64,000 bases of DNA, taken from positions 124,001 through 188,000 of the IMG/VR virus record IMGVR_UViG_3300020084_000003; one strand, 5' to 3'. A model generated the notes under the pieces. The model did not search any database. It was not told the origin of the DNA and saw only the letters and a program-made list of their open reading frames with translations. Shown here in pieces: positions 5,924 to 24,635 of the stretch; the stretch's first letter is position 1; every line of letters begins with the position of its first letter. Made by a program: the position numbers and the translations under genes.

Positions 5924-5952
5924 GTCTTTATCCTTTCCCTATATGTGGCCCC

Positions 5953-8619: not shown

Positions 8620-8745
8620 TCACTCGTCTTTCAACTGAAATTTCTTGTGAACCCCCGACTCGTATTGCTTGCGGGCGCTTTTGTTCTTGCGCGCGTTGCG
8701 GATTTGTTGCTTGGCGTTGTTCTTGTCGCGCTTTTGGTCTTTCAT
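8620..8745 (-). CDS. 41-aa highly basic peptide (MKDQKRDKNNAKQQIRNARK...)
   Basis: Read by hand. AAGGA RBS and an upstream promoter. Confidence 0.55.
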   Translation of the reverse strand: MKDQKRDKNNAKQQIRNARKNKSARKQYESGVHKKFQLKDE

Positions 8746-8962
8746 GATCCGGGTTTCCTTCTGTTTCCGGGTTTCTGTATCTTGAATGTATGGGGGGCCA
8801 GATGATTCGTCAATAGGAAAAAATAGGAAAGATTCTTTTTATTTGGGGTTGACAGTGTGGGGTGGGGATAATATTCTGAAATAGAATCCAGAATCATCGT
8901 TCACGATTCGTTCTCATGGGGTTTCGCTGCGAAACTGTTTCACGTGAAACAATGACATTGCC

Positions 8963-9154
8963 CTAAAGCAATGCCATAAGTTGAAACATGATGATGATAG
9001 CAGACAAACAAATAGTAAGAAGAAACGAACAAGTCAAAGCGTTAACTGTATCTTTAGCAATCGCGCAACGGATGCTAAGGTTAAGCAAAATCAACCCCAT
9101 CATGCAAAACGTAGCAGTAGCGCAAGAAGCGATGAAAAGAAGAAAGTGTTCCAT
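8963..9154 (-). CDS. Small two-TM membrane protein
   Basis: Hydrophobic 63-aa ORF flanked by two parS sites. Confidence 0.55.
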   Translation of the reverse strand: MEHFLLFIASCATATFCMMGLILLNLSIRCAIAKDTVNALTCSFLLTICLSAIIIMFQLMALL

Positions 9155-9218
9155 ACTATTTTCCTTTTGTTTCACGTGAAACATAGGGGCGGGATGATCC
9201 CGCCCCCTGTTGATTGCA

Positions 9219-9524
9219 TCAGGCTTGCACCGCTTCCGCTTGTGCAGCACGTTCGGCACGTTTCGCCGCGTTGCGTTCCATCGTGGCAACCCACGTCCGC
9301 GCACGGCCCGTCAGGGCAGGAACATGGCGCGGACGACCACGCTTGCCTTCAATCCGTTGTTCCTGAATCTCGACCAGACCAGCCTCGACCAGTTGCGCCG
9401 TCAGGTGACGCGAAGGGATGTTTTCAGCATCGCCCGCCTTGATCGCGACCAGCGCGGCAAGCTTGGCCTCTTTGCTGTTGAAGGTTGCCGGGCGACCACG
9501 GGCGGCTTTGATTTCTTTCGTCAT
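9219..9524 (-). CDS. AT-hook (RGRP) / winged-helix-like DNA-binding protein, copy 1
   Basis: Two RGRP motifs and the pattern 'PSRH...LVEAGLVE...RGRP..VPALTG'. Paralogs at 13167, 23299 and 25705. Confidence 0.75.
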   Translation of the reverse strand: MTKEIKAARGRPATFNSKEAKLAALVAIKAGDAENIPSRHLTAQLVEAGLVEIQEQRIEGKRGRPRHVPALTGRARTWVATMERNAAKRAERAAQAEAVQA

Positions 9525-11024
9525 GATGTAGTCCTTTCTTTGCTGTTGGGCGTCTTGCCCGTTTCCATGATTAAGAGATAGAGCATGATTCTGATTCGTG
9601 CAAGCACAAAATGCGATAGGAACGAAAATAGTTTTTGCATCTTCTCGGCAAAAGAACAAAACGTGAACGAATAGGTTTCGCGGCGAAACCACGACGCAAT
9701 GAGAACGAATCATGAACGGTGATTCTGGATTCTATTTCAGAATATCATACTCAGGTTTAGTGTCAACAAGAAAAAAAGCCCCGAAGGGCTTTTCCTCATT
9801 CCATGAAGTTTTCAAATTCTGTCCAGCTATATTCTTCCGCAACCCCATAGGTTTCTTGGAATTGCTTGAACTCACGTTCTGCCGCATCGTGCGAAAGATT
9901 GTAGTGGGTGAGCAGGAGGTTCATAATGTCTGCGGGCGAGAGCATGGCGGGTTCCTTTCCCTTGGCTATGATTAAGATATAGCATCAGATTGTGATTCGT
10001 GCAAGAGGTAAAATGACTTTTTTCAAATTATTTTTGGGGTTGACAGGATAGGGGAGGGGATGATATTCTGAAATAGAATCAAGAATCACCGTTCATGATT
10101 CGTTCTTATAGGTTTCGCCGCGAAACTGTTTCACGTGAAACAAAAGAAAGAGGGGGCGTTATGCCCCCTGTTTCCATCCTTCTGCGATTTTTTCTTGCAT
10201 ATCATCAAATGCGATATGTTTGGGGATAACGGTTTGCGTCATAGCTTTACCATCCCAATACAGAGTCGCAGTTACATCTTCGTGCCCGAAAGTGGACTCG
10301 TAGGTGATTTTGAGGTTGGAGTTGGTAATAGTAATCATGGCGGGGTTCCTTTCCTTTGCCGATTATTCTTTATAGCATTAGCGGCAGGTTGCGTCAACAG
10401 GAAAATGCGTCACCAGATAGATCAAATGAATCCTTTCACAATGTGCGGATTCTTTGAAATAGTGATTTGTTGCTTTGATGAAAGCAAACCGGAACGGGCG
10501 AAATGCCAGACGTTTATTGCGATAGACACGGGAACAGATAGGTTCCCAACGGAAACCGCGCAGAAACTTGTGGTTCCACTCGCAGGAACGATAGTAATGA
10601 GTCAAGTCGCGCATTGCCTTATCTCCTGCTAGGGTTTCCATCTATATTTATAGTTGCACGATTCGGGTGTCTATGTCAATATCTAAAAAATAATTGTGAC
10701 GCGAACATGACACTTGCAAACAACCTAAACGGGTGCTAAGGTTCTGGCAGTTGTAACGAAAGGAGCGAATCATGTTTGATATTGTCAAGAAAATAATTAC
10801 ATTCCCCGGAAAATTTGTCGATTGGTTTGAGGCGGAACGTGGAACTGGTGAAGGAAAAAATGGTTGGGTAGGTAAACCATCGCGGGACTAGGGAGGATGA
10901 AAGACTCCTCTTTTCCCTATTGACAGCATGGGGAGGGCATGATATTCTGAAATAGAATCTTGATTCTTGCGTTCATGATTCGTTCTTTTGCGGATAAAAG
11001 AAAAAGCCCCGAAGGGCTTTCCTG

Positions 11025-11213
11025 TTACCAAGGGGCTTTTGCCAGAGTGACTTTGACTTTCCGCTTTGCCGCTGCGCGTTTCTCTTGAGCCAGAGCGAAA
11101 GCCTTTTCATCTTTTGCGGTAATGGCAGGAGCGGCACAATTTCCGCAACGCTTCTCAAAATCGACCCGGTTCATGTTAGCGTGGGAATTGAAGTATTGAG
11201 CGGAGACTTGCAT
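11025..11213 (-). CDS. Small basic protein, VxLxxxPW-tail family (...KVTLAKAPW)
   Basis: Own promoter, RBS and terminator. Shared C-terminal motif. Confidence 0.75.
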   Translation of the reverse strand: MQVSAQYFNSHANMNRVDFEKRCGNCAAPAITAKDEKAFALAQEKRAAAKRKVKVTLAKAPW

Positions 11214-11318
11214 CGGGTTGCCCTTTCTTGGCTGGTGTAATTATAGAATATGCCTTGCCAGATGATTCGTCAACAGGAAAAATGAAGTTTTTTGAATCTT
11301 TTTTGTTCACGGTTTGTT

Positions 11319-11837
11319 CTATATATAACCATGTTCCCGTTCTGCTTCATTTCTAGCAACTATTGCATCATCCAATTCTTTGAATCTTCCTATATGTTTT
11401 CTTTTACCATTTCCATCTCTAATTCTGACAACATAAGCATTTTTGAAAAAGTATATATTTCTTTCTTTTAACTTATTAGGTTTAACTACATTTTTATAAT
11501 TAATACTTTGTGAAACATCTCTAAGATTTTTTATTCTATTATCTTTTTTATCTTTATTAATATGATCTATCTCACATTTAGGCCATTCGCCGTAAACAAA
11601 AGCCCACGCTAATCTATGTGCGGAACAAATAATTTCATTATCCGCATATCCCAAATATATGTAACCATTTTTGTTAGACCCTGCAATTTTACCAGAATAC
11701 TCATTATTCCAATTAAGTTTTCTTTTAGTATTATATGGACGATGGTGTTCTTTTCTTTCTTTCCAATAAAATAATCCAGTATCTTTATTATAAGAAACTA
11801 GTTCTTTCCATAATTCTAAATTAGAATCACTTTTCAT
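11319..11837 (-). mobile_element. Freestanding HNH homing endonuclease with a C-terminal AP2-like domain
   Basis: 'AHRLAW..VYGEWP..EIDHINKDKKDNRIKNLR' and 'HIGRFKELDDAIVARNEAE'. AT-rich relative to its flanks. Confidence 0.85.
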
Positions 11838-11883
11838 GCTATACTCCTTTTTATTCGGAGCATAGCATGAAAATATTAAATTG

Positions 11884-11976
11884 TCAATCCTTCCAAGGAT
11901 AGGGCGGGAGGCTGACGGGCTTGCTCGACTCTTTCTGCGAGGCAAGGGCTTGAGCGATTTTCTTTTGCTTGGACAT
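11884..11976 (-). CDS. 30-aa peptide, VxLxxxPW-tail family (MSKQKKIAQALASQKESSKPVSLPPYPWKD); not in the ORF track
   Basis: Read by hand. AAGGA RBS and an upstream promoter. Confidence 0.65.
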   Translation of the reverse strand: MSKQKKIAQALASQKESSKPVSLPPYPWKD

Positions 11977-12190
11977 TCGGGCTTTCCTTCTGCTTTCCCG
12001 TTTCCTTATCTAATAGATAGCCCATCCCAACATGATTCGCAAGAGGTATGATGCAGATTCTTTTTTTATTTTGTGCATTGACAGGTTGCGGGGTTGTGTG
12101 ATATTCTGCGCGACCAATTGACCAGATGATTCGTTGTTTCACGTGAAACATAAAGAAAAGGGCAGAGGTTTACCCCCTGCCCCTATGCCT

Positions 12191-12622
12191 TTACAATGCC
12201 CGCAGCCATTCCAGAACGTCGCCGGGAACCTCTTTCCGCAGCCATGCGCTGCCGTATGTGTAGGGCTTGCCGTTGTGCAGATAGGTTGCATCGTGCAAAA
12301 TATCGGCGGGCATTTGTTCCAGAATGTCTTGATATGCCCGCACCCCAGATTGTGCAATCCATGCCTCTTGCGCGGGTGATCCTGCCGTCAAGTCATTCAG
12401 ATGCCAATCTTTCCAGATTTGGTAAAGTTTGGCAATCTTACCAACAGTCCAGCCCGGCGCAGTTTCCGTGATGTTAAGCAGTTCATCACGGATTTGTCCA
12501 TAGGCAATGTTTCCGACATTGCCGCAAATCGACAGATTGTCGCCTTCTTTAATTCCAATTTCCACCACGACCGGGCGATGGTCGATTTTGCCGATAGTGA
12601 GTTTCTTGAACATTTTTCGCAT
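12191..12622 (-). CDS. Hypothetical phage protein (WHLNDLTAG...Y.YGSAWL motif)
   Basis: GAGG RBS and cassette promoter. Confidence 0.75.
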   Translation of the reverse strand: MRKMFKKLTIGKIDHRPVVVEIGIKEGDNLSICGNVGNIAYGQIRDELLNITETAPGWTVGKIAKLYQIWKDWHLNDLTAGSPAQEAWIAQSGVRAYQDILEQMPADILHDATYLHNGKPYTYGSAWLRKEVPGDVLEWLRAL

Positions 12623-12756
12623 CCTCTTGTTTGCGTGTGATTCTGTTATGCCATATCTCTTCCGAGTCGTCAATCATTTTCTTTCTATTGACACCCTGCC
12701 CCTTCCCATGATATTCTGCGCGGCCAGACGAATCAGTAAAAAGAAAAGTGTGGCAA

Positions 12757-12975
12757 TTATGCCACACTCAACTCCGTAATCTTGCAGGGAAATACTTCTT
12801 CCGTTGTCATGAAACCGCCGAAGTGAACCTCGATGCCGAACCAATGATTCGGATTCATTCCTTCCGGCAGAGGATCAATCTTGACCACGCGACCCGTTGA
12901 ACCTGCGGGGATCGGCTCGACCCCTTCAATGATGACCAGCGGAACGATGTTCTTGACGATGGAACCAACTTGCAT
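12757..12975 (-). CDS. Small beta-rich hypothetical protein
   Basis: AGGAG RBS and cassette promoter. Confidence 0.65.
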   Translation of the reverse strand: MQVGSIVKNIVPLVIIEGVEPIPAGSTGRVVKIDPLPEGMNPNHWFGIEVHFGGFMTTEEVFPCKITELSVA

Positions 12976-13166
12976 TTTGTTCTCCTGTTTCTGATGATTC
13001 TGTTATGCCATATCCATTCCGAGTCGTCAACATTTTTCTTTCTATTGACAGGTTGCGGGGTTGTGTGATATTCTCGCCCGCCCTGCCCCTGCCCGATTCG
13101 CATTGGAATGTTTCACGTGAAACAAAAGCAAGAGGGGCAAGGTTTCCCCTGCCCCTCTCTCTTGTC

Positions 13167-13457
13167 TTAGGCTTCCGCCTTGGCAGCGCGACGGGCCGCG
13201 TTGCGTTCCATAGTCGCAAGCCACGAACGGGCTTTGCCGGTCAGGGCAGGGACATGAGCGGGACGGCCACGCTTGCCAGTAGGTTCCGCCGTTTTCATCT
13301 CGACCCGGCCCATCTCGACCAGTTTCAGCAGCAGATGGCGCGAGGGGATGTTCTCAGCATCGCCCGTATGGATGGCGCGGAGTGCAGCCACGATGGCGTC
13401 ACGGTTGGCGAAAGTAGCGGGACGGCCACGGGCGGCTTTGGTTTCGGTGTTGGTCAT
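13167..13457 (-). CDS. AT-hook (RGRP) / winged-helix-like protein, copy 2
   Basis: Close paralog of 9219-9524. Confidence 0.75.
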   Translation of the reverse strand: MTNTETKAARGRPATFANRDAIVAALRAIHTGDAENIPSRHLLLKLVEMGRVEMKTAEPTGKRGRPAHVPALTGKARSWLATMERNAARRAAKAEA

Positions 13458-13753
13458 GAGGTAGTTCCTTTCTCGTTTGTGGGCGTCTTGCCCGTTTCCA
13501 TGAACTATAGATGCCACATGGATTCGATTCGTGCAAGAGGAAAAATGACTTCCAAGCGAAAAAAGTTGTAAGCCGTTGAAAGTAAACGGAAACTTTCTTT
13601 TCTTTATGAGAATCACCCCATGCGCGGGCGCGAGAGAATATCACAAGGAACGGGCATGGGTCAAGGGTAAAAATGATTTGGTGCAATTGAACTTTGGGGT
13701 TGTGCTTGCGTTGGGGATGTGTCAGAACTGACAGGACGCAACAACAGAAGGAA

Positions 13754-13972
13754 ATGAGATTGCATCCCACCTATTACGCTTTAGGTATCGTGACGGATGC
13801 GCGAGGACTTCAACGGATGGCAACTTTTCTTAATCTAACCAAATGCGGCAACACTTTTGCAAATGGTAACAGGATGCTACAATATGATAAAGAAAACAAT
13901 CTTTTGCTCTTGAACTCGACAAAAGATGATGCCTTGAGACTCAGCGCACGATTCAACTTTGAGTTTGAATGA
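13754..13972 (+). CDS. Hypothetical protein, paralog of 6338-6571
   Basis: Sequence similarity. Followed by a terminator and a parS site. Confidence 0.75.
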   Translation: MRLHPTYYALGIVTDARGLQRMATFLNLTKCGNTFANGNRMLQYDKENNLLLLNSTKDDALRLSARFNFEFE

Positions 13973-14173
13973 AAGAAAGAAAGAGGCAGGGGAAACCCTG
14001 CCTCTTTTGTTTCACGTGAAACAGTTTCGCAGCGAAACCACCGAATCACTTTTCACGTGAACGCGGGAGAATATCAAATAAATAACTATAGGTCAACAGG
14101 AAAGATTGAGTTGACAAACCGTTCTGGTTGTGCGAGTATTGGAATCAGAACTCAAACATGAAAGGAATCGAAA

Positions 14174-14377
14174 ATGATTGTTATCGTGGAACATATGGAT
14201 AAACAAAATCCTGATGGGCGCTATATGAAAGACGTTATCACCAATGCAAAAGCAGCGGAATCGTTCCTCGGGCAAGTCAATATGTCCAACAAAAACAAGG
14301 GCAAGGGCGAGGCTCAGGCGGGTGACGTGATCGGAAACTTGCGTATCGTGAAAATTTCCGAGAAAAATAAAGCTTGA
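14174..14377 (+). CDS. Small hypothetical protein
   Basis: TTGACA promoter and AAAGGA RBS. Confidence 0.65.
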   Translation: MIVIVEHMDKQNPDGRYMKDVITNAKAAESFLGQVNMSNKNKGKGEAQAGDVIGNLRIVKISEKNKA

Positions 14378-14430
14378 CGCGAATCAGGGATTAGGGCATG
14401 ATGGAATCACATCAACAAAGGAAACCAGCC

Positions 14431-14616
14431 ATGTTCTTGTCCCTGACCAAAATCCGTGAAGATGCAATGAAAATCATCAAGGAAAACAACATCACTTGCC
14501 CGGCAGAGGTTTACTTTGCCGTCATCAACGCGACTAACGGTGACGTGATTCAAAAGCGCGTCAACAAGGTAGTTGATAGCATCTGCCGCGAATTGAACAT
14601 CCCGCAAGAGTGGTAA
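14431..14616 (+). CDS. Small hypothetical protein
   Basis: Own promoter and AAGGA RBS. Confidence 0.65.
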   Translation: MFLSLTKIREDAMKIIKENNITCPAEVYFAVINATNGDVIQKRVNKVVDSICRELNIPQEW

Positions 14617-14958
14617 GACACCATCGCACAAGACCTCAGAAGCCCGCCTAGTGCGGGTTTCTTGCTTTTGTGGGTCTACCTACCAGAGCAGCATAACGCG
14701 GCTCACAGGGCAATTTTTAGGGGGTTGACACTACGGGCAGAGGTATGATATTCTCCGCGACTTTTTCCAATAGTGATTCGTATTTCGCTTTTCTTTCAAT
14801 ATAGATTAATGCGTCACAATATCTTTTTGAATATTTAATGTAAGCATCACATTCTTTAATTAAACGAATTAATTCTAATTCATCCATTTAATTCTCCTTT
14901 TCTCTCCTGATCTATTTATGAGAAAAGGAAAAGGGGCATTTCTGCCCCTTCCTGTTTC

Positions 14959-15330
14959 CTATGCGCTGATCTTTTCCAGCACTTCTTTTTGATTGGCAAT
15001 CGCCTTGTCCAGAGCATCATTGATGAACATGGCAACGGCAGGAACCTTGTCAGGTCCGCACAGCGTGACAGCCGCAAGCCCTTCGGCATCTTCACGGGTG
15101 AACATGGGGGCAAAGGTAATGCCCGTCACGTGCCCTTTCAAGACTTCGCGGCGACCATTCACGGCAGGGGCGAAATCGTAATCCATGCCCATGCCCGCGA
15201 CAGGATTCCACACAACCCAACCGTGCGAGACAATCGAGTTTTTGATTTTGCGGGCTTCACATTTTGCGATGAACTCGGCGGCATCCTTGGAAACCATATC
15301 GCGCAGAGCCTTGGCTTGTTCTTCGGTCAT
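14959..15330 (-). CDS. Hypothetical early protein
   Basis: Cassette promoter with AAAGGAACCC RBS. Confidence 0.7.
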   Translation of the reverse strand: MTEEQAKALRDMVSKDAAEFIAKCEARKIKNSIVSHGWVVWNPVAGMGMDYDFAPAVNGRREVLKGHVTGITFAPMFTREDAEGLAAVTLCGPDKVPAVAMFINDALDKAIANQKEVLEKISA

Positions 15331-15517
15331 TTCTGGGTTCCTTTCCCTTTGCTGATGATTCTTTATCTCACATCCCAAACGATTCGAAAAGCGAAAATTG
15401 ACATAGGGGCCAATTTTTTATAGTATTGACACTATACCCTCTCCTATGATATTCTTCCGCGCCCATATAGAGAGTGATTCGAAAAGGGTGTGACATTTCT
15501 GCCACACCCTCGGTAGG

Positions 15518-15781
15518 TTAGGCAAGTTTCCTTGCCAGCCTCTCTTGATATTGTTGCATCCGTTGTTCTGCGAACGTGATGCAGCCGACTCCCACCATAC
15601 CGAACTTTACCGCGTTGACTTGTGCGCGGATGTAGGTTGCATTAAGTTTCCGAAGAAACTTCGTGGCGGGGTCGTTGTTTGCCACTTCACCCCACAGAGA
15701 CGAGTCTTGGCTGACGTTCTCTTCATAGTAGTCGATGCGGGCGAACATTGCTTTGCAGAGGTCATTGAAGTTGCGGATCAT
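15518..15781 (-). CDS. Hypothetical early protein
   Basis: Same cassette leader as 14959. Confidence 0.7.
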   Translation of the reverse strand: MIRNFNDLCKAMFARIDYYEENVSQDSSLWGEVANNDPATKFLRKLNATYIRAQVNAVKFGMVGVGCITFAEQRMQQYQERLARKLA

Positions 15782-15955
15782 CTTTTGGGTTCCTTTCCCT
15801 TTGCTGATGATTCTTTATCTCATATCCCAAATGATTCGGAAAGCGAAAAATGACTGACAGAAACACTTTTTTCGAATCACCCAATGCAAAGGCGGCGCAG
15901 AATATCACACTCAGACTAGCAGTCAAGAAGAAAAAAGGGGATTGCTCCCCTTCCT

Positions 15956-16273
15956 TCACAGGTTCCACATTTCCAGAATTGCATGGGCTTGCTTTACCGC
16001 ATCCCGGTCAAGGTGCCATGATGGGACTCCACCTTCAAGATTCAGTCCCGTTCCCCGCACTGTTTTGAAAGTGTCCAGATTGTAACGGGAAACAAATTGC
16101 CCGAGGATCGTGTCACCAATTTTGTCAAACCGATAAAGAATGTCGTAAAACTCAACCATCGGTTCATCTTTTTCGTGGGTGAGTTGCATCTTATGGCCGT
16201 AGCAGTCGCCTTTTTCCACAACGCGCATGTTGAAGGCTTCACCGCTTTTGTTCTGGATAGTTGCGAGTTTCAT
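15956..16273 (-). CDS. Hypothetical phage protein
   Basis: Same cassette leader. 'VEFYD..Y....GQFVSRY' motif. Confidence 0.7.
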   Translation of the reverse strand: MKLATIQNKSGEAFNMRVVEKGDCYGHKMQLTHEKDEPMVEFYDILYRFDKIGDTILGQFVSRYNLDTFKTVRGTGLNLEGGVPSWHLDRDAVKQAHAILEMWNL

Positions 16274-16364
16274 CTGTTGGGTTCCTTTCCCTTTGCTGAT
16301 GATTCTTTATCGCATAGCAGAAACGATTCTGCAATAGTAAAAGGGGGCATTGCTGCCCCCTTTT

Positions 16365-16655
16365 TCATCCCATTGGAGTCATTGTCCTGATCCCGAAAAT
16401 GATTCCGTCGATGTAAGTTGCCATTTCCGACGCATTGACACGACGCGAGAGAGGGCCGAACGTGGACTCGCCCGTGGACTCTTCCATTTCCCGCAGGATA
16501 TAACCGCCATAAATGGGGGCATGATCCAGCTTGATGTGGCCCACGTTTCCGTCAAACGTGCCGTTTGCGTTGCGGGTATAGGGCGTTTCGGGACGGTTCA
16601 GAATCTTGTTCAGGCGGGTAACTTTCGCTTCCAGTTCTTTTTTAGTAACGCGCAT
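16365..16655 (-). CDS. Hypothetical early protein
   Basis: Same cassette leader. Confidence 0.7.
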   Translation of the reverse strand: MRVTKKELEAKVTRLNKILNRPETPYTRNANGTFDGNVGHIKLDHAPIYGGYILREMEESTGESTFGPLSRRVNASEMATYIDGIIFGIRTMTPMG

Positions 16656-16824
16656 TTGGGTTCCTTTCCCTTGCTGATGATTCTTTATCGCATATCCGAA
16701 AGCAGATTGCAAGAACTTTTTTGGGGTTGACGATACATCCCTTCCCATGATATTCTCCCGCTCCAACTGCCTAGATGATTCGTTGTTTCACGTGAAACAT
16801 AAAAGAAAAGAGGGGCAATGCCCC

Positions 16825-17079
16825 TCAATCCTCTTCCGGGTCAATTGAATAAGAAAGAACATCAATCAACTTTTGTCTTTCTTTATCATCACAAAGAAAC
16901 TCAACAAGGGCAGTTATCTTTGAGTATTTGGTATCATTGAAGATACCGAAATCAGATAAAAGGCTTTGAAACTTTTTAAGCATTAACTCTTCACAATGGT
17001 CAATTGCCTTTTCCCTTGTTTCAAACATTTTCCCGTCAATTTCATAAACGGTTTTAGTTGCAATCCGACGCATTTTCAT
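16825..17079 (-). CDS. Hypothetical protein
   Basis: Translationally coupled to the upstream ORF. Confidence 0.6.
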   Translation of the reverse strand: MKMRRIATKTVYEIDGKMFETREKAIDHCEELMLKKFQSLLSDFGIFNDTKYSKITALVEFLCDDKERQKLIDVLSYSIDPEED

Positions 17080-17354
17080 TTCCCTTTCAATTTGGCTTCA
17101 CGTGCAGCCCGCAATTCTTCCCGATATTCTTTCCCGTAAAGTTTATTGAATTTGCGATTATATTCCCGCATCATGGCGAAAAGTTCGCGTTCTTTTCGAT
17201 AGGCTTCCTGCCATTCCGGGGTGGCCTTGATGTGGGCGGGGGTCAGACCCATCGGGCCACGTTCATCACCGGACACGATGCGAAGGCGGATTGCGGCAGC
17301 ATCATGCGCCATATCAATCATGGCTTTCCCGGCTTTTGCTTTCAGATAGGTCAT
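17076..17354 (-). CDS. Hypothetical protein (GPMGLTP..IKATPEW motif)
   Basis: Cassette promoter and RBS. Confidence 0.7.
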   Translation of the reverse strand: MTYLKAKAGKAMIDMAHDAAAIRLRIVSGDERGPMGLTPAHIKATPEWQEAYRKERELFAMMREYNRKFNKLYGKEYREELRAAREAKLKGK

Positions 17355-17509
17355 GACAAGGTTCCTTTCCTCTTTTCCTGATTCCTTTATGCCATTTTGA
17401 AAATGATTCGTCAAGCACTTTTTTTAGATTGACAACCAATCCCATCCCATGATATTCTTGGCGGCTTTCCGAATCAGTAAAAGAAAAGGCGGGTTTCCCC
17501 GCCTCCCTC

Positions 17510-17911
17510 TCACCACCCTCCGATCCAATAAGGCTCATAATTTTCACCCTCAGACGGCGTTACCATATAAACCGACTCTGGCCCCTCTGCATCCTCGTAA
17601 ACCCGTTCCACGTGGCGCTTATAGGCTGCTACGCTAAGGGGCATTTCGCTGATATAGCTTGCCCGCGTCCCGTCGCAGTCACGCGATTCACGTATAACGA
17701 AAACAGTCCCGCGTTCTGTTTTCTTTTCTTCCATAGCATCGCGGATCAGTTGTTTCTCTTGAAGGGCATCCCAATGATTCCCGTAACGATTTTGATGGCC
17801 TTCGGCACCCACACCAAAAACACCATCAACATCATATTTTCCGCCATGTTTGCGGAAGTTTGCGCGAATTTTCAGAAAATCATATTTGCTCAGGTTGACT
17901 TTGGAGAACAT
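17510..17911 (-). CDS. Hypothetical protein
   Basis: Cassette leader with AAAGGAACCC. Confidence 0.7.
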   Translation of the reverse strand: MFSKVNLSKYDFLKIRANFRKHGGKYDVDGVFGVGAEGHQNRYGNHWDALQEKQLIRDAMEEKKTERGTVFVIRESRDCDGTRASYISEMPLSVAAYKRHVERVYEDAEGPESVYMVTPSEGENYEPYWIGGW

Positions 17912-18076
17912 GATTCGGGTTCCTTTCCCTTTGCTGGTATCCCTTTATCGCATATCCAAAAGAGGATTGCAACAAATATTTTCGAATCAGTTTGGGAAAA
18001 GGTGCGGGAGAATATCATAGAACCTACAGGCAGGCAATAGAAAAAAGGTGTGACATTTCTGCCACACCTTCTGATC

Positions 18077-18418
18077 TTATCGGAGGTAGTCGGGACCGGT
18101 CCACTTGATCCACGACAAATCCCCTTCTGCCAAGTTGCCCCGCGCTTGGTTGCGGGCAGGGGTTGCCCATCCGGCAGGCTTCAAAATATCGCCATATTTG
18201 AACTTCTTGTCGTCATGGCAGTTGACAATGAAGCAATGCACCGAATTGTCGAGAATCACCTTGATGTATTTTTTACCTTCCGTGTAAGTCAGGATTTCAC
18301 CCGACTCCATCTTGGCAACATGGCCCACGGCATAGCTGTTGCCTTCCGCAAGGCTTTTCGCGTTCCACTTTTTGTAGTCCGCGATAATGGCATCCAGAAG
18401 GCTTTTGACGTTCAGCAT
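18077..18418 (-). CDS. Conserved phage hypothetical protein (GKKYIKV...GDILKPAGWATPA..ARGN)
   Basis: Motif recognisable from widespread myophage hypothetical proteins. Confidence 0.7.
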   Translation of the reverse strand: MLNVKSLLDAIIADYKKWNAKSLAEGNSYAVGHVAKMESGEILTYTEGKKYIKVILDNSVHCFIVNCHDDKKFKYGDILKPAGWATPARNQARGNLAEGDLSWIKWTGPDYLR

Positions 18419-18478
18419 CTTTGCAATCCCTTGTTTTGTGTTTCTGTGATTCCTTTTTACAGGAACCACATTGACTTG

Positions 18479-18805
18479 TCAACCCCGCGTGACTTGGTAG
18501 CGTTTGCCGGGAACGGCATGTTCAACGCAAGTCGTGTTTTCATAGGGGTTGAATACGGCAACGAACGTGTTGCTGCCTTGCTGGATAATGTCATATTCCC
18601 ATTGATAACCGAGTCCATCGACCTCGCCAAGCCCCGAACCAATGTAACGAATATCTTCCGAATATTCCATAATGTCAGCAAAATGTTCCACATCATAGCA
18701 CTGCGCCGCGACAGGCTCAACCTCGATGATGCTGGACATATACCCATCAGCGAAAGCGGCAGACGTGGAAAGTATCAGGGCGGCGATGGTTGCAAATTTG
18801 GTCAT
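18479..18805 (-). CDS. Secreted/periplasmic acidic protein
   Basis: Signal peptide MTKFATIAALILSTSAAFA. Confidence 0.65.
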   Translation of the reverse strand: MTKFATIAALILSTSAAFADGYMSSIIEVEPVAAQCYDVEHFADIMEYSEDIRYIGSGLGEVDGLGYQWEYDIIQQGSNTFVAVFNPYENTTCVEHAVPGKRYQVTRG

Positions 18806-19751
18806 GGTTCTCGTTCCTTTCGGTTGTGTTTTGTTTCTCTGTGATTCTGTTATGCCATGAATGAAGATGATTCGCAAGCACTTTTTCAAAAATCTTTTTC
18901 CTTGACTTGATCTTGTGTTGTGTGATATTCTCTGCGAATTTTTCGAATCAAAAAAAGAGGGGGATTTCTCCCCCTTAGTTATTCGTTTACTTGCATTGCA
19001 ATTGCCCAGACACTTGCGCCTTCTTCAATGCTCATATCATGACGCTGACAAACTGCGGCAAGATTTGTTCCATCCGGTTGAATTTTCACAATTTCTTCCT
19101 TGATTTTCTCATACATGACTGCTTTGCCCATTATTCCCGTTCCCCTTCATCGTCAACCCGAACGTCCAGAAGTTGATTCCGATTGTCGCGGGCTGCAAGG
19201 CGTTGTTCGCGCCGTTGCTGGCGAACGCCATTGCGATCACGTTTCCGATCACGCGGGGTGAATTCTTCGTCGTCTTTTTCAAACCATTTCGCCATTTTGT
19301 TTCTCCTATGTCTGGCGCTTCGTTGTGATTCTGTTATAGCTGATTCGGTTCAGGTTGTCAAGAATAAGTTTTTTTCACCCATTCATCAAAATTGGTATCG
19401 AAACCCTCGAAAATACATTCCGAATTGACATAATTTTCAATCGTCCCATCATGAAACGAAACCGTGTAAATGGGTTCCAAATTGTCACCACCAACATCTT
19501 CCATCCGCATCCCCACTATATGGAAAGGTTTTCCGTTGTGGTTGGTGCAAGTATCTGCATAGAAAAGCTTTCTCAAATTAAGATTCGGCGTTCCCACGTC
19601 ATTCTCCTTTTGCTGTTGTGATTCCTTTATGCCATACCCATTCCGATTCGTCAATCAATTTCTTTCTATTGACACGATACAGTATGGTGTGATATTCTCT
19701 GCCGCCCAGACGAATCACAAAGAGTGTGACATTTCTGCCACACCCTTGTTT

Positions 19752-19985
19752 TCAGACTGCCTTGTAAGATTTCACTTGACGGGACCGGGTGAAAGATTCG
19801 CCTTCATGGATACTGTAGCCGATAAACTTGCGTTTCTGGCATTCACGCTTGGCGATAGCTTCCGAGAAGTCCATACGGTTGCGGGCGTCCAGAATAATCA
19901 CGGCACGATCCCCACAAGCAGGAATTGCCTTTGATGGTTTACCCGGAAAGGCAACAGACATTTGGTAAAATTGAGCGTAGCGCAT
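19752..19985 (-). CDS. Hypothetical protein
   Basis: Cassette promoter TTGACG-17-CATAAA at 20015-20043. Confidence 0.7.
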   Translation of the reverse strand: MRYAQFYQMSVAFPGKPSKAIPACGDRAVIILDARNRMDFSEAIAKRECQKRKFIGYSIHEGESFTRSRQVKSYKAV

Positions 19986-20105
19986 GAGAGGTTCCTTTCT
20001 CTTTTCCTGATTCCTTTATGCCATACCCATTCCGATTCGTCAAGAACAATTTTCATCTTGACACTATCGGTGTTGATATGATATTCTCTGCCGCTTTTGC
20101 GAATC

Positions 20106-20784
20106 AAAAAAAGTGGGGCAACCGTTCCAAACAGTTGCCCCGTTACGTCATATTATTAGCCCCTGACGCGGGGGATGCACAATGGTCGTCTGACCATTGC
20201 AAAACCTGTTTCATTTCAACAGGCTTGGCAATGGTGGCATATATTAGCCTATATGCCAGAGGCTTATTCACCTACCCAGATGTTGCCATTTATTTACACA
20301 AATAGCTCGCTGTTTTGACCTAATAGGATTTACGTTACAGCGCGGGATTTTCCCTTCAGGCCCGACGCAGCGGATTTTCCTGTAACTACCTACTAGAGCA
20401 GGATTTAGACTGCCGTGACAATCCCTTTTCTGTTATCGCGTCCCCTCTCTTCTATACGGGAAACGGCACGGAGTTTAATGGACTGACAGCACCCTGTCTG
20501 TATGATCCATTTTATTTTTCTATACTTTCTTTTTTTACATAAATTGGCCGCGCGTCCCGGCCTGCGCGAATGGAATTACATGGCTTTTCCTTCCCTGCTA
20601 TCCTGTCCATCTTTTTTTATCGGCTGGACATTTACCGCAATGATTAAACTTTCTCTATATGTATTTTTACACTCATAAATTAAGGTTAACTATTGGGGCG
20701 GATCACGCATGTTTCAATTCTCCCTAGTTGCATCTAGTTAACGCCATTTAGGTTCAGAGCCATCGGGTTCTTCCCGATCCCTAT
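20106..20784 (-). ncRNA. Putative large (~680 nt) structured non-coding RNA
   Basis: Promoter TTGACA (20814-20819)-17-TAGATT (20791-20796) and a terminator hairpin with U7 at 20106-20141. There is no minus-strand ORF of 60 aa or more. Many nested stems have G-U wobbles only on the minus strand. Confidence 0.7.
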
Positions 20785-20827
20785 GCAAAAAATCTACCAT
20801 GTGATTCTCTGCATGTCAACACCTATT

Positions 20828-21082
20828 TCAAAGTGTTGTAATTAGCCGCCCGAAGGAATTGCACCCTCCTATTCTTCCCCAAAAAGAACCTAACACGTTT
20901 GGGGCATGTTAGTTCGTCCACTAGGAAAGCGGCTTATTGCAACACTTTTTTTAAAGAGACAGGCTAGTTCAGCAAGTCCAAAGGTAACTATCTTAGGCGA
21001 TAATGTTTTTGACCTTTGTGGGTATGACTTCCTAAGTGAGCCACTTTTTTACCCTGTCTTGCTTCCCTTCCTGTCTCTCTAT
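20828..21082 (-). ncRNA. Putative ~250-nt two-domain ncRNA (long irregular hairpin plus a tRNA-like domain)
   Basis: Cassette promoter at 21089-21117 with no ORF. Closing stems are 20955-20963/21070-21078 and 20830-20849/20929-20948. T-arm-like GAGGG-TGCAATT-CCTTC at 20852-20868. Confidence 0.6.
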
Positions 21083-21572
21083 GCATTCTTTATGCCATGC
21101 TGCATTGCGATTCGCAACAGGAAAATGCACATCGGCAAAACTTTTTAGGGGTTGACTCATATAGGGTTGGTGTGATATTCTCCCGCACACGATTCGGGAT
21201 AGAAGAAAACCTGTGACATTTCTGCCACAGGTTTTTGTTGGTTTATTCTGTCAGTCTGCGTGAGCAACTTCCAGATTGGAATCCACGATCAAGAAAACGC
21301 TGCAATCGGGATTTTCTTCATCGAATTGGTCCCAAGCCTTTTCATAGCTTTCCGCCTCGACTTCTTCATAGCGGCGCTCTTCTTCTTCATTGAAGTATCC
21401 GAAAAGAAACTTTTGCATGTTCACTCCTTTGCTTGTGTGATTCTCTTATGCCATATCATGAGATGATTCGCAAGTGAAAAGATACTCTTGACATTATTTC
21501 TTATGGATGATATTCTTCCGCGCACGATTCGGGATAGAAGAAAACCTGTGACATTTCTGCCACAGGTCTATT

Positions 21573-21815
21573 TCAGATTGCGATTGCTTTTGCAAGATGT
21601 TTGATGTAGTCCACCACATCACCATTGAGAAAATCAATCTTGACAAGCATTGATTTCAGATGCCGTTGTTCTTCACTGTTGGTCATTTTCATGGCGTCTA
21701 GAATCATCCCAATAAGAATATAATTGACTCCACTTGGACCTTCGACTTCTATAATTTCGTCCGTCTGGATTCCTTTTTCTTCAATGAAAGTGTCCAGCCA
21801 TTTGTTGAAGGTCAT
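21573..21815 (-). CDS. Hypothetical phage protein
   Basis: AGGAG RBS and cassette promoter. Confidence 0.7.
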   Translation of the reverse strand: MTFNKWLDTFIEEKGIQTDEIIEVEGPSGVNYILIGMILDAMKMTNSEEQRHLKSMLVKIDFLNGDVVDYIKHLAKAIAI

Positions 21816-21972
21816 CTGCTTTCTCCTTTGCTTGTGTGATTCTCTTATGCCATATTCATTTCCGATTCGCAAGTGAAAAGTTGCGCTTGACATTATTTCT
21901 TCTGGATGATATTCTCACGCGCACGATTCGAATCGAAAAAGAGGTGTGACATTTCTGCCACACCTACTTCTT

Positions 21973-22344
21973 TCATTTTTTGCGCTTTTGATTATACTTG
22001 ACCCGCGCACCGCGATCAAGCCACTCTTGCGGAGTCCAGACTCCTAGTTCGGAATAATCCTCTCCTTCCGCCAGAGGACGCAATTCTGCCGTTTTATAGG
22101 CTGCGCCCATTTCGGTTGCGCCATTGTAGTTTTCCGACAGGGTTGCATAAAGCCCATGATCCGCTTCCCCATCCGTATAGACGTTCTGCCACGCATAGGA
22201 ACGCGCACGATGCGAGGGAATGAAGCCATTCGGAATGACGCATTCCATGAACGAATAAGGGCAATCATCCTTGCCCATTTCGATGCGGGCACTAGGCCAG
22301 TTGCCGTCATTTCCGTTGCCCATCCGAAGAAGAAACTGAGCCAT
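21973..22344 (-). CDS. Hypothetical protein
   Basis: AGGAG RBS and cassette promoter. Confidence 0.7.
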   Translation of the reverse strand: MAQFLLRMGNGNDGNWPSARIEMGKDDCPYSFMECVIPNGFIPSHRARSYAWQNVYTDGEADHGLYATLSENYNGATEMGAAYKTAELRPLAEGEDYSELGVWTPQEWLDRGARVKYNQKRKK

Positions 22345-22715
22345 GCTAAACTCCTTTTGCTGGCGTTTCGTATGATTCTGTTATGCCATGCCAGAAACGA
22401 TTCGTCAACAGCAAAATTAAATTGAAAGAATGTTTTTTCGAATCACCCTTTCAAAACGCGCGGCAGAATATCATGGCGGCTGCGCTAGGTCAACAAGAAA
22501 AAACCGTGACATTTCTGCCACGGCTTGATTACTTCTGAACAATCTCTATTCCTTTGTCTCTCATATTCTCAATTATTGAACCCATGCCATAAGTCAATCC
22601 TGATAGCCATTTCATAGCCTTTTCTGGGTCTTTGGTCGTTTGCACTGGCATATCATTGCAGATGGAAACATAATCGTCACCATCTTTTTCAATTATATAT
22701 CTTCCGGTTGGTATC

Positions 22716-23072
22716 TCAATATCCATTATTTTTATTTTTTGCATAATCATAGTCCTCTATATTTTTGTGACTATCAAGCAAATTAGGATGCGTCGTCACT
22801 AGGGTTTTTCTTTCTTTATCATAAACCAAAGGGATAATTCCATCAATATTACTAAGGATTAACGCATAGACTGACAAACGGTTGCTTTGTTTCGCACGAA
22901 AAGATGCCACTACAGCAACATTGTGCCCATTGAAGCTGACGTTCTGTCTCTTGCCCGTGTGAATGGCTTTTACAATCGCGTTATAGCCATCGTTGTTGAT
23001 AGTGAGGCCATAGCGTTCTTTGAGCCGATTCTTGAAGTGATTTTTCTGACAATTTGCTTTGTTGGGTCGCAT
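22716..23072 (-). CDS. Hypothetical protein with an H-F-x-x-R-x-x-E-R motif (possible RelE-like fold)
   Basis: HFKNRLKERYG...LVTT. The fold assignment is inference. Confidence 0.5.
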   Translation of the reverse strand: MRPNKANCQKNHFKNRLKERYGLTINNDGYNAIVKAIHTGKRQNVSFNGHNVAVVASFRAKQSNRLSVYALILSNIDGIIPLVYDKERKTLVTTHPNLLDSHKNIEDYDYAKNKNNGY

Positions 23073-23298
23073 GAAGTCCTGCCTTTCTTTGTTGACTTTT
23101 GTTGTTGCATCCAAGATAGGCAATTTGGTCACACAGTTCAACAGGAAAGAGATTCGCCATATTATTTCGATCTATTGCCATTGACATTGTTATTGATTCG
23201 CGATATTCTCTGCACCCTGACGAATCACAAATGAATAGGTGTGACATTTCTGCCACACCTATTTTTCTTAAAAGAAAAGGGCCGACTGGCCCTTGACT

Positions 23299-23706
23299 TT
23301 ATTCTTCGGGGTTGGACGAAACGTCAGCGAAATCTTCCGATTCGGCTTCGGCAGCGGCAGCAGCTTGCGCGGCCTTTTCCTCTGCCTTGGCGCGGTTGCG
23401 TTCGATCAGCTTGACCCACGAATTGCCCTTGCCAGTCAGCGACGGGACCAGAGCGGGACGGCCACGGCCACGGGTTTCGCCTTCCGCCAGCGTGGCAGCT
23501 TCCAGCTTGACCATGCCCTCTTCAACCAGTTGCTTGACGATGAAGCGCGACGGCATCTTGTCAGCGTTGCTATCGCGGATTGCGACCAGAAGATCAAACT
23601 TGCTGTCGCGATCAGCCAGCGTGGGCTTGCGGCCATTGTTGGCGCGACCATCGGTTTTGACTTCGGCTTGAGCGGCGACTTCGTTGGTTTCAACTTGAGC
23701 GTTCAT
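23299..23706 (-). CDS. AT-hook / winged-helix-like protein, copy 3
   Basis: PSRF..KQLVEEGMV...RGRGRP..VPSLTGKG. GC-rich codon usage. Confidence 0.75.
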   Translation of the reverse strand: MNAQVETNEVAAQAEVKTDGRANNGRKPTLADRDSKFDLLVAIRDSNADKMPSRFIVKQLVEEGMVKLEAATLAEGETRGRGRPALVPSLTGKGNSWVKLIERNRAKAEEKAAQAAAAAEAESEDFADVSSNPEE

Positions 23707-24635
23707 GATGTAGTTCCTTTCTTTCTGGGTTGCGGCGTCATTGCCTGTCTCTTTCGATGATTAAGATATAGACGATGATTCTGATTCGCACAAGAGGAAA
23801 AATGCAGATCAGCAAACTTTTTTTCGAATCGGTCCAGATGAAAAGCGCGGGAGAATATCACTGGATAGATTCATTGTCAACAGCTATTTTTGTTTCACGT
23901 GGAACAATGTCAAACAAAAAAGGTGTGACATTTCAGCCACACCTTCCAGTAGTTATAATCTGATATGTTTTTCTTTCAAAAATTACTTCAATCCCGCATT
24001 GCTGCACCGCCAATAGTTTTAAAGAAAGAAAAGTTAGAAGTATCCCTAGAAAAATAGTTTTTGCCCAAAAATTCATTTTGCATTTTGTCCCTTTCAAATG
24101 AAGAAAAATAACACCCATAAAAAATAACCTGAAATAATTACTGTTACTATCCCCACAATAACAGCAATTAATCCCATATAAAATGTTAAAGTGTGAAATC
24201 TAACACCCATGAAATAAATGCCACCAAATATCAAATATAGTGACAAAACAAATGCCACCCCTATTAGAATAAAATAAAAGATGGCAAATGTTTCTATCAT
24301 TTCATATTCTTTCCACAGAAGTTATTTCTAACCCATGATTCGTCAGTATGTTATACACCATTCTCTCACAGGTTGCAACCTCTTTCCATAGAAAGCGCCA
24401 CTCTTGAAGATGCTTCACACGAAGCACATCCTCAACAGCAACGTCTAGATCACGTGGGTTGTTCTTGCTATAACAACAGAAAACATTCATCTTTGGTTCC
24501 CTTTCATAGCTGATGATTCCATTCTAATCTATTTAGAATCAGAAGTCAACTCTTGACAATGAAAGTGGTTAATGATATTCTCTCAAACTGATTCGCCATA
24601 GAAGAAAGGTGTGACATTTCTGCCACACCCCATTT

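What the first reader, a model, noticed from the sequence alone, without database searches (positions are those of the whole stretch)
20106..20819. About 680-nt structured non-coding RNA occupying a gene-cassette slot
Seen: a near-consensus promoter (TTGACA-17-TAGATT, minus strand) and an intrinsic terminator enclose about 680 nt with no credible ORF, in a region otherwise full of ORFs. Minus-strand stems include ATCGGG/CCCGAT, GTTAACTA/TAGTTAAC, TGTCCA/TGGACA, TGCCGT/ACGGCA, nested CTAGTAGG..GTTACAG / CTGTAAC..CCTATTAG, TGGCATATA/TATATGCCA, CCTGTT/AACAGG and CAATGGTC/GACCATTG, joined by A-rich linkers. G-U wobbles in the nested stem and the terminator would be A-C mismatches on the plus strand. 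Established: phage-associated large ncRNAs of similar size exist (ROOL, GOLLD). I cannot assign this one to a family, so it may be a new class.
Basis: partly seen in the sequence, partly recalled or inferred. Interest (0 to 1): 0.88.

Follow-up and report, generated by a model that had tools for sequence, protein, structure and literature searches.

The report
Orphan structured RNA gene in jumbo phage
A freshwater jumbo phage carries a roughly 680-base stretch with its own promoter and terminator, no protein-coding signal and an unusually stable RNA fold, so it is probably a non-coding RNA gene; no relative was found anywhere, so neither its structure nor its function could be confirmed.

Summary
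On the minus strand, a near-consensus extended -10 promoter (20819-20791) and a textbook intrinsic terminator (20141-20106) bracket about 680 nt. That stretch has no ORF over 42 codons, no codon-usage signal and no ribosome-binding site before any ORF longer than 6 codons. It folds far better than shuffles (z -6.6) and better than its complement (z -3.7). Seven of eight neighbouring coding sequences score between -0.5 and +2.

It is not a member of any Rfam 15 family, including ROOL, GOLLD, OLE, HEARO, introns and RNase P. It sits in a 28-kb array of small early-type gene cassettes in a 284,776-bp phage contig.

The ORF-less stretch is larger than reported, about 1.2 kb. It includes a second, roughly 200-nt structured unit just upstream (z -4.55 against -0.43 on the complement).

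The weak point is that it is a singleton. Every homolog search returned only identical copies from the same phage population. Covariation cannot be tested and "new class" cannot be claimed.

Best reading, about 0.5: a real, early, stand-alone structured RNA acting in trans. Main rival, about 0.25: a transcribed relic of cassette debris. Interest is moderate.

The parts
20791..20819 (-). Sigma-70-type promoter: TTGACA, 17-nt spacer, TAGATT, with an extended -10 TG. The predicted start site is near 20785 (GCATAGGG).
   Evidence: It has the same TTGAC-N15-TGG-NANA layout as the array's type-2 promoters.
20106..20786 (-). Predicted ORF-less transcript of about 680 nt (composition A 32%, G 25%, U 23%, C 20%).
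20176..20182 (-). 3' arm (UUGUGCA) of the helix that pairs the 5' end (UGCAUAG, 20787-20781) with the 3' region and closes the molecule ahead of the terminator.
   Evidence: mean pair probability 0.77. This is a prediction only.
20566..20778 (-). 5' domain. It holds hairpin AUCGGG/CCCGAU (20778-20762) and a branched sub-domain (20720-20566) that includes UGUCCA/UGGACA (20630-20604).
   Evidence: Domain z is -2.66 on the minus strand against -0.59 on the plus strand.
20357..20564 (-). Central domain, closed by a 15-bp G+C-rich long-range helix: CAGGCC..GACGC.GCGG (20564-20548) with CCGC.GCGUC..GGCCUG (20373-20357).
Evidence: pair probabilities 0.89-0.99. Domain z is -2.98.
20326..20411 (-). Cluster of four AAAUCC motifs, with 5' bases at 20406, 20377, 20350 and 20331; two are GGAAAAUCC.
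   Evidence: 4 observed against 0.46 expected, P about 0.0005; only 19 minus-strand sites in 64 kb, and no other cluster.
20193..20306 (-). 3' domain: three tandem near-perfect hairpins (20306-20285 with a GUAA loop, 20257-20236, and 20235-20193).
   Evidence: pair probabilities 0.91-1.0. Domain z is -4.49.
20200..20226 (-). Inner hairpin CCUGUU-GAAAUGA-AACAGGUUUU, a shortened copy of the array's standard terminator hairpin, buried inside a longer helix.
   Evidence: alignment (the loop GAAATG and the arm ACAGGTTTT are shared); D3.
20106..20141 (-). Intrinsic terminator: 12-bp stem, 3-nt loop, one U-G pair, then a U7 tract. The plus-strand reading has no T run, so it works in one direction only.
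20058..20087 (+). Type-1 array promoter (TTGACA-N16-GATATTCT) on the opposite strand, pointing antisense into the RNA unit.
   Evidence: No plus-strand terminator is predicted in 20100-21200.
20880..21086 (-). Unit A: a second ORF-less structured transcript of about 200 nt, closed by an 11-bp helix (21080-21070 / 20963-20953). Its terminator is at 20912-20890.
   Evidence: z -4.55 on the minus strand against -0.43 on the plus strand. No coding signal.
21089..21117 (-). Canonical type-2 promoter of unit A (TTGCGAATCG...TGGCATAAA).
20830..20948 (-). 20-bp helix (20948-20929 with 20849-20830, 90% complementary) that encloses the unit-A terminator and ends just before the RNA promoter. It could form only in read-through RNA.
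   Evidence: I1; p 0.87-0.91; z -4.73.

Best explanation
Window 20786-20106 (minus strand) is a stand-alone gene for a structured non-coding RNA of about 680 nt in a 285-kb freshwater jumbo phage.

**Shown by sequence and computation.**
- It has its own strong host-type (sigma-70, extended -10) promoter directly after the previous unit's terminator.
- It has its own strong one-directional intrinsic terminator directly before the next gene's promoter.
- It has no coding capacity.
- Its predicted fold is much more stable than chance and more stable than that of its complement.

**Inferred.**
- Host RNA polymerase makes it early in infection, like the small host-takeover-type genes around it.
- It folds into three domains, with its 5' end paired to the region just ahead of the terminator. 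That would make it a stable RNA.
- It acts in trans as a scaffold or decoy for a protein or other partner. The fourfold AAAUCC cluster in the central domain is the best candidate binding surface.
- With the roughly 200-nt structured unit A just upstream, it forms a 1.2-kb RNA-only slot in a protein-cassette array.
For: - **Boundaries:** promoter and terminator.
- **No ORF:** all stop types occur in all frames.
- **No coding signal:** none is seen here while the neighbours have one. This is the longest low-coding stretch of the window. There is no ribosome-binding site before any ORF longer than 6 codons.
- **No protein remnant:** the stop-to-stop pieces hit no Pfam or PHROG family. No ORF from 11 related loci leaves a trace here.
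- **Fold:** z is -6.27 for the whole unit. The body gives -6.63 against -3.70 on the complement. Seven of eight control CDSs of the same array give z -0.45 to +2.0.
- **Helices:** many are predicted with probability above 0.9.
- **Motif:** the AAAUCC cluster has P about 0.0005 and is unique in 64 kb.
- **Companion unit:** adjacent unit A shows the same kind of signal with very strong strand asymmetry.
- **Precedent:** ORF-less orphan transcripts of 236-619 nt are documented by RNA-seq in jumbo phage PA5oct (PMC7318152).
Against: - **No homolog anywhere**, so there is no covariation and no evidence of selection on the fold. The only sequence difference seen, 20336 A to G in L002, is at a contig end.
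- **No expression data.**
- **Fold z is not unique.** Values of -5 to -7 also occur in three other 640-nt windows of the array that hold believable protein genes, and in the CDS pair 24094-24490.
- **Weak domain asymmetry.** The central and 3' domains show little strand asymmetry on their own.
- **A recycled part.** One hairpin is a cut-down copy of the array's standard terminator, so part of the "structure" may be recycled cassette punctuation.
- **Absent in relatives.** Relatives with 66-75% identical downstream genes carry protein genes in this position, not the RNA.
- **The proposed mode of action is pure inference.**
Confidence: 0.5

Rival explanations
1. Transcribed relic. The slot once held an ordinary cassette or cassettes. 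What remains is a promoter, a terminator and degenerate debris of cassette punctuation (hairpins, terminator copies). It has no function of its own.
For: - It is a singleton with no conserved relative.
- The inner hairpin at 20226-20200 is a shortened family terminator.
- The array is clearly shuffled between relatives, and homology to them stops at about 20055, at the module boundary.
- The upstream 55-aa gene is also an orphan.
- Inter-cassette modules by themselves give strongly negative z-scores.
Against: - Only one element resembles array punctuation; the rest of the 680 nt has no similarity to anything in the window.
- No protein remnant is left.
- Decayed coding sequence should fold like the CDS controls (z about 0), not at -6.6 with strand asymmetry.
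- Both the promoter and the terminator are among the best sites in the region.
Confidence: 0.25
2. One larger RNA. Units A and B are parts of a single structured transcript of about 1 kb (21086-20106), made by read-through of the weak internal terminator. The internal promoter gives a shorter isoform.
For: - A 20-bp helix (20948-20929 / 20849-20830) brackets the unit-A terminator.
- A 12-bp hairpin covers the internal promoter region in read-through RNA.
- The 985-nt fold pairs 21086-21081 with 20180-20175.
- The slot has one canonical type-2 promoter (21117) and one canonical downstream module (20058/20043).
Against: - The unit-A terminator (8-bp stem with a T-rich tail) is predicted to work.
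- The internal promoter is strong.
- The end-to-end pairing has a probability of only 0.72 and is a single-sequence prediction.
Confidence: 0.12
3. An mRNA for one or more very small peptides (6-42 codons), with the structure serving regulation.
For: - Short ORFs exist.
- AGGGAG-N9-AUG precedes a 6-codon ORF at 20710, and AAGGA precedes an AUG-UAA start-stop at 20581.
- Unit A has an 18-codon GTG ORF, read from the sequence.
Against: - No ORF longer than 6 codons has a ribosome-binding site comparable to the array's genes.
- There is no codon-usage signal.
- There are no family hits.
Confidence: 0.06
4. Mainly a DNA-level or antisense-regulated element. It could be an origin or recombination site, or a target of the plus-strand type-1 promoter at 20058 that reads back through it.
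For: - The plus-strand promoter points into the unit, with no plus-strand terminator inside it.
- An A/T-rich tract at about 20540-20500 lies next to G+C-rich palindromes.
- There are four repeated AAATCC motifs.
Against: - The fold advantage is strand-specific: -6.6 against -3.7 here, and -4.55 against -0.43 for unit A. That argues for RNA rather than DNA structure.
- The AAATCC spacings (29, 27, 19) are not helically phased.
- The same plus-strand promoter type sits behind about 30 ordinary cassettes, so it is not specific to this unit.
Confidence: 0.05
5. A very diverged member of a known large RNA family (ROOL, GOLLD, OLE, HEARO or similar) that the covariance models miss.
For: Size, phage location and a multi-hairpin architecture resemble ROOL and GOLLD (for their properties).
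Against: - No Rfam 15 model reaches its gathering score anywhere in the window.
- With relaxed filters and E up to 10 on 1.2 kb, only five short chance matches to unrelated small families appear.
- There is no tRNA in 64 kb.
Confidence: 0.02

Closest known systems
ROOL RNA (Rfam RF03087)
   Same: A large ORF-less structured RNA of several hundred nucleotides, encoded by phages and prophages, with no known protein partner or function (bioRxiv 10.1101/2024.12.08.627333).
   Different: - The ROOL covariance model gives no match, even at E up to 10.
- There is no tRNA island nearby.
- ROOL is a widespread family defined by covariation, whereas this RNA is a singleton.
- Multimer or nanocage formation has not been tested.
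GOLLD RNA (Rfam RF01998)
   Same: Lake- and phage-associated, very large, ornate, and of unknown function.
   Different: - The covariance model gives no match.
- GOLLD usually exceeds 800 nt and has a universally conserved 3' half, often next to or containing tRNAs. None of that is seen here.
Orphan ncRNAs of jumbo phage PA5oct (ncRNA001-004, 236-619 nt)
   Same: - These are ORF-less regions of a roughly 286-kb jumbo phage that depends on host RNA polymerase.
- They have no sequence similarity to anything else and no known function (PMC7318152).
- This is the closest analogue in kind.
   Different: - Those were defined by RNA-seq, and the paper describes them as lacking known promoters. This one is defined by promoter, terminator and predicted fold, with no expression data.
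- There is no sequence similarity to any GenBank phage.
CsrB/RsmZ-type protein-sponge RNAs
   Same: A multi-hairpin RNA ending in a strong terminator, with a repeated short motif that could bind a protein.
   Different: - GGA motifs are not enriched (14 observed against 12.4 expected).
- The only CsrB model match is the terminator hairpin, at E 2.4.
- The repeated motif here is AAAUCC, four copies in one domain.

Membership tests
ROOL (RF03087) | Match to the family covariance model at or above the gathering score. | tested here: not met
   whole window, no hit; E up to 10 on 19900-21100, no ROOL hit.
ROOL / GOLLD | Typical context: a phage or prophage, often beside tRNA islands. | tested here: inconclusive
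   Phage context is met. There is no tRNA in the 64-kb window. The tRNA context is frequent but not obligatory.
GOLLD (RF01998) | Match to the covariance model, that is, the conserved 3' half. | tested here: not met
OLE, HEARO, group I/II introns, RNase P, tmRNA, 6S and all other Rfam 15 families | Match to the covariance model. | tested here: not met
   One search gave no gathering-level hit in the window. One search gave only matches at E of 1.8 or worse to Fusobacteriales-1, STnc240, DapZ, RAGATH-25 and CsrB, all short hairpin or terminator matches. ARAGORN found no tmRNA.
CsrB/Rsm sponge RNAs | Many GGA motifs, mostly in hairpin loops. | tested here: not met
   GGA 14 observed against 12.4 expected (P 0.33).
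Independent bacterial-type transcription unit | Sigma-70-type promoter upstream and intrinsic terminator downstream, on the same strand, insulated from the neighbours. | tested here: met
   upstream unit's terminator at 20912-20890, promoter at 20819-20791, terminator at 20141-20106, next promoter at 20043.
Non-coding RNA gene (generic) | Absence of coding capacity. | tested here: met
Non-coding RNA gene (generic) | A fold more stable than chance and specific to the transcribed strand. | tested here: met
   Caveat: a few coding stretches of the array reach similar z-scores.
Non-coding RNA gene (generic) | Conserved structure supported by covariation among homologs. | not testable with these tools
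   No homolog was found.
Non-coding RNA gene (generic) / PA5oct-type orphan phage ncRNA | A discrete transcript is observed. | not testable with these tools

The most novel reading that the evidence does not exclude
The 680-nt RNA is the founding member of a new class of large, ornate phage RNAs, possibly together with the 200-nt unit A as a two-RNA module. Like ROOL and GOLLD, it would fold or assemble on its own into a higher-order particle, and it would be deployed early in infection from a host-takeover gene array. Relatives would exist only in sequence space that these tools could not search by DNA, namely the ENA and Logan assemblies where this phage's closest relatives were found.
Probability: 0.15. 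Interest if true: 0.75.

Novelty: new variant of a known kind. Interest (0 to 1): 0.4.

Why it matters
Large, highly structured RNAs are rare. The few phage-borne ones, ROOL and GOLLD, turned out to form RNA-only nanocages whose function is still unknown. A well-delimited 680-nt candidate is easy to synthesise and to test by probing, native sizing or cryo-EM.

This candidate has its own host-type promoter and terminator and sits among early host-takeover-type genes of a jumbo phage. If real, it would add an RNA player to an array thought to hold only small proteins.

Its value is limited for now because it is a singleton. Without relatives there is no evolutionary evidence that the fold matters. 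ORF-less orphan transcripts have also been seen before in jumbo phages.

Tried and rejected
- **Known RNA family.** Rfam 15 at gathering score on the whole window and at E up to 10 on the locus gave nothing meaningful. ARAGORN found no tRNA or tmRNA.
- **Alternative genetic code or simple pseudogene.** All three stop codons occur in all frames. Ten stop-to-stop pieces, searched separately, hit no Pfam or PHROG family; the best was E 0.038, which is noise. No ORF from 11 related loci gave a tblastn remnant inside 20106-20819.
- **Paralogs in the window.** None by blastn or nhmmer.
- **Homologs elsewhere.**
  - GenBank phages by blastn and megablast: none.
  - IMG/VR: five exact or gapped patterns from the RNA and two array-grammar patterns meant to pull in related arrays returned only the source contig plus chance hits.
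  - JGI metagenomes, 18-mer: only the same 284,776-bp contig plus three chance hits.
  - Genome collection, two patterns: none.
  - Loci next to homologs of the downstream 77-aa gene in IMG/VR (about 44% identity) and in ENA/Logan (66-75%): protein genes in the slot and no RNA similarity.
  - Protein database queried with the spurious 47-aa ORF that gene callers place on the RNA: only itself.
  - The upstream 55-aa gene: only itself.
  - nhmmer of both units against 134 non-self loci (1.15 Mb): nothing at E up to 1.
  - A covariance model of the 3' domain against 97 loci: only itself.
- **CsrB-like sponge idea.** GGA motifs are not enriched.
- **AAATCC as a genome-wide regulatory motif.** It is not enriched elsewhere.
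- **Fold z-score as a sufficient criterion.** Rejected, because three other array windows and one CDS pair score as low.
- **L007's ORF-less unit as a homolog.** There is no sequence similarity, and its z is only -2.3.

Full report
**Where this is.** The window comes from a 284,776-bp viral contig, IMGVR_UViG_3300020084_000003, also held as Ga0194110_10000009.
- Identical copies of the locus occur on contigs from five JGI samples numbered 33000200xx-33000206xx. From memory, and unverified, these are Lake Tanganyika metagenomes.
- The window encodes phage-type replication and repair proteins: a Dda/RecD-like helicase, an ATP-dependent DNA ligase, a T4-type RNA ligase and AAA+ proteins.
- It has no close relative in GenBank phages.

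**The cassette array.** Positions 4-32 kb form a compositionally distinct block, 42-50% G+C against 35-39% further on.
- It is packed with small genes on the minus strand.
- These genes are punctuated by a repeated grammar:
  - a shared terminator hairpin, GGTGTGGCAGAAATGTCACACC;
  - a "type-2" promoter, TTGACGAATCG...TGGCATAAAGGAATCA;
  - a "type-1" promoter, TTGACA-N16-GATATTCT, found in both orientations.
- Partial relatives of this array exist only on short ENA and Logan contigs. They share the promoter architecture, but the cassettes are in a different order.

**The observation.**
- The promoter is TTGACA, a 17-nt spacer and TAGATT (20819-20791), and it also has an extended -10 TG.
- The terminator (20141-20115 plus U7) is the strongest in the 5 kb scanned and works in one direction only.
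- Between them lie about 680 nt whose longest minus-strand ORF is 42 codons with a GTG start and no ribosome-binding site.
- All three stop codons occur in every frame, so a recoded genetic code is not the explanation.
- A codon-usage log-odds profile trained on 42 called genes of the array gives clear coding frames for the flanking genes and none from about 21300 to 20040.
- By the same measure, 19891-21360 is the longest low-coding stretch in the 64 kb.
- No stop-to-stop piece matches a Pfam or PHROG family. No ORF of 11 related loci leaves a tblastn trace inside the unit.
Only five are favoured by the energy model. The nested stem and three others cost 2.7-8.3 kcal/mol over the minimum.

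**Is the fold more than chance?** Yes, with a caveat.

| Region | z, minus strand | z, plus strand |
|---|---|---|
| Whole unit (20106-20790) | -6.27 | -4.90 |
| Body without terminator (20146-20785, 60 shuffles) | -6.63 | -3.70 |
| 5' domain (20566-20786) | -2.66 | -0.59 |
| Central domain (20308-20565) | -2.98 | -3.64 |
| 3' domain (20146-20307) | -4.49 | -3.62 |
| Unit A (20880-21086, 200 shuffles) | -4.55 | -0.43 |

- Seven of eight coding sequences from the same array give z between -0.45 and +2.0 on the sense strand. Ordinary cassette bodies are therefore not structured.
- The caveat is that 61 control windows of 640 nt average z -2.45, because inter-cassette hairpins contribute.
- Three windows that hold believable protein genes reach -5.2 to -6.9.
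- The CDS pair 24094-24490 gives -6.28.
- Fold stability is therefore strong supporting evidence but not diagnostic on its own.

**Predicted anatomy (single-sequence prediction).**
- The 5' end (UGCAUAG) pairs with UUGUGCA just ahead of the terminator region and closes the molecule.
- The 5' domain spans 20778-20566.
- The central domain is closed by a 15-bp G+C-rich long-range helix (20564-20548 with 20373-20357, probability about 0.9-0.99).
- The 3' domain has three tandem near-perfect hairpins (20306-20193).
- The central domain carries four AAAUCC motifs within 81 nt. That compares with 0.46 expected (P about 0.0005) and 19 sites in the whole 64 kb on that strand.
Two are part of a repeated GGAAAAUCC(C)GC.
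- The nested stem and the long-range helix are not nested with each other, so both could coexist only as a pseudoknot. This is untested.
- GGA motifs are not enriched.

- The ORF-less region is about 1.2 kb. Directly upstream lies unit A (21086-20880), with a canonical type-2 promoter (21117-21089) and its own terminator (20912-20890).
- Unit A has no coding signal. Its compact fold is closed by an 11-bp helix.
- A 20-bp helix (20948-20929 / 20849-20830) brackets unit A's terminator. A 12-bp hairpin covers the 680-nt unit's promoter region in read-through RNA. A single roughly 1-kb read-through RNA therefore cannot be excluded.
- A type-1 promoter on the opposite strand (20058-20087) points back into the unit. 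No plus-strand terminator is predicted inside it.
- The inner hairpin at 20226-20200 is a shortened copy of the array's standard terminator. At least part of the RNA was built from cassette punctuation.

**Homologs.** None was found. The routes were:
- blastn and megablast against 50,697 phage records;
- eight IMG/VR scans, five with pieces or motifs of the RNA and two with the array's own promoter and terminator grammar to pull in related arrays;
- one JGI metagenome scan and two genome-collection scans;
- loci around homologs of the downstream gene in IMG/VR and in ENA/Logan contigs;
- the 5.8-billion-protein database, queried with the spurious ORF that gene callers place on the RNA and with the upstream gene;
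- nhmmer over 1.15 Mb of fetched loci;
- a covariance model of the 3' domain.

In relatives whose downstream gene is 66-75% identical, the slot holds ordinary protein genes. DNA homology to the window stops at about 20055, the module boundary. It lies ten bases from a contig end and carries little weight.

**Interpretation.**
- The best-supported reading is a genuine, independently transcribed, structured non-coding RNA made early by host polymerase and acting in trans. I put this at about 0.5.
- The specific idea that it is a protein-binding scaffold or decoy, with the AAAUCC cluster as the contact surface, is inference only.
- The main rival, at about 0.25, is that the slot is transcribed debris of former cassettes. 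In its favour are the singleton status and the recycled terminator hairpin. Against it are the strength and strand specificity of the fold, the intact strong signals and the absence of any protein remnant.
- Minor rivals are a single 1-kb read-through RNA (a variant of the main reading), micro-peptide mRNAs, a DNA-level or antisense-controlled element, and a diverged known family. The covariance-model tests effectively exclude the last.

**Comparison with what is known.**
- It works like, or at least looks like, the large phage RNAs ROOL and GOLLD in size, phage location and ornate hairpin architecture.
- It fails their membership test, a covariance-model match, and lacks their usual tRNA neighbourhood.
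- The closest analogues in kind are the ORF-less orphan transcripts of jumbo phage PA5oct: 236-619 nt, with no similarity to anything and no known function (PMC7318152).
- I therefore rate it a new variant of a known kind, not a demonstrated new class.

**Verdict.** This is a real and cleanly delimited feature that is probably an RNA gene. It is accompanied by a second, smaller candidate that shows even cleaner strand-specific structure. Interest is moderate (0.4). It is directly testable and could be a new large RNA, but the evidence rests on one sequence, and orphan ncRNAs in jumbo phages have precedent.

Noticed in passing
window 20880-21117 (minus): Unit A is a second ORF-less promoter-terminator unit of about 200 nt, directly upstream of the finding. 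It has a canonical type-2 promoter and a compact fold closed by an 11-bp helix. Its z is -4.55 (0 of 200 shuffles) on the minus strand against -0.43 on the plus strand, which is the cleanest strand-specific RNA signal in the locus. It also contains an 18-codon GTG ORF rich in His and Lys.
   Followed up: partly
window 3275-39103 (43 sites; e.g. 19669, 20058, 21152, 21488, 21887 on +): There are 43 copies of the promoter-like motif TTGAC-N-N14-16-(G/T)ATATTCT.
- 33 are on the plus strand, although the genes are on the minus strand.
- Most plus-strand copies in the 12-30 kb part of the array sit just after a minus-strand terminator hairpin and point into it. Several of those hairpins are followed by T runs on the plus strand too.
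- This predicts a family of roughly 55-nt antisense RNAs.
- A GATTCG/CGAATC box lies 10-25 nt downstream of each copy and also inside the -35 region of the type-2 promoters.
   Followed up: partly
window 4261-23912 (11 sites, e.g. 6573-6588): A 16-bp perfect palindrome, TGTTTCACGTGAAACA, occurs 11 times in the array, often just downstream of type-1 promoters. It looks like an operator for a dimeric DNA-binding protein.
   Followed up: no
window 24094-24490 (minus): Two small called genes lie here: 62 aa, and a 68-aa hydrophobic protein. Their sequence folds at z -6.28 on the sense strand against -1.65 on the complement, as extreme as the finding itself. It is either a very structured mRNA or something beyond coding.
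   Followed up: partly
window 20200-20226 (minus): The RNA's inner hairpin CCUGUU-GAAAUGA-AACAGGUUUU is a shortened copy of the array's standard terminator CCUGUGGCAGAAAUGUCACAGGUUUU, embedded in a longer helix that sequesters its U run.
   Followed up: yes
L007 6969-7540 (IMGVR_UViG_3300048854_000081, 350 kb): A distant relative has its own ORF-less unit about 570 bp long between a TTGACA-N17-TAAACT promoter and an intrinsic terminator.
- It lies 0.75 kb downstream of the homolog of the 77-aa gene and about 3.3 kb upstream of tRNA genes.
- It has no Rfam hit and no similarity to the finding, and its fold z is only -2.3.
   Followed up: partly
window 4000-32000 vs 38000-64000: The cassette array has 42-50% G+C, while the replication-gene region has 35-39%. 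Array order differs between relatives while the promoter and terminator modules are conserved. This suggests cassette shuffling by recombination between the modules.
   Followed up: no
It lies at a contig end, so it may be an assembly error.
   Followed up: yes
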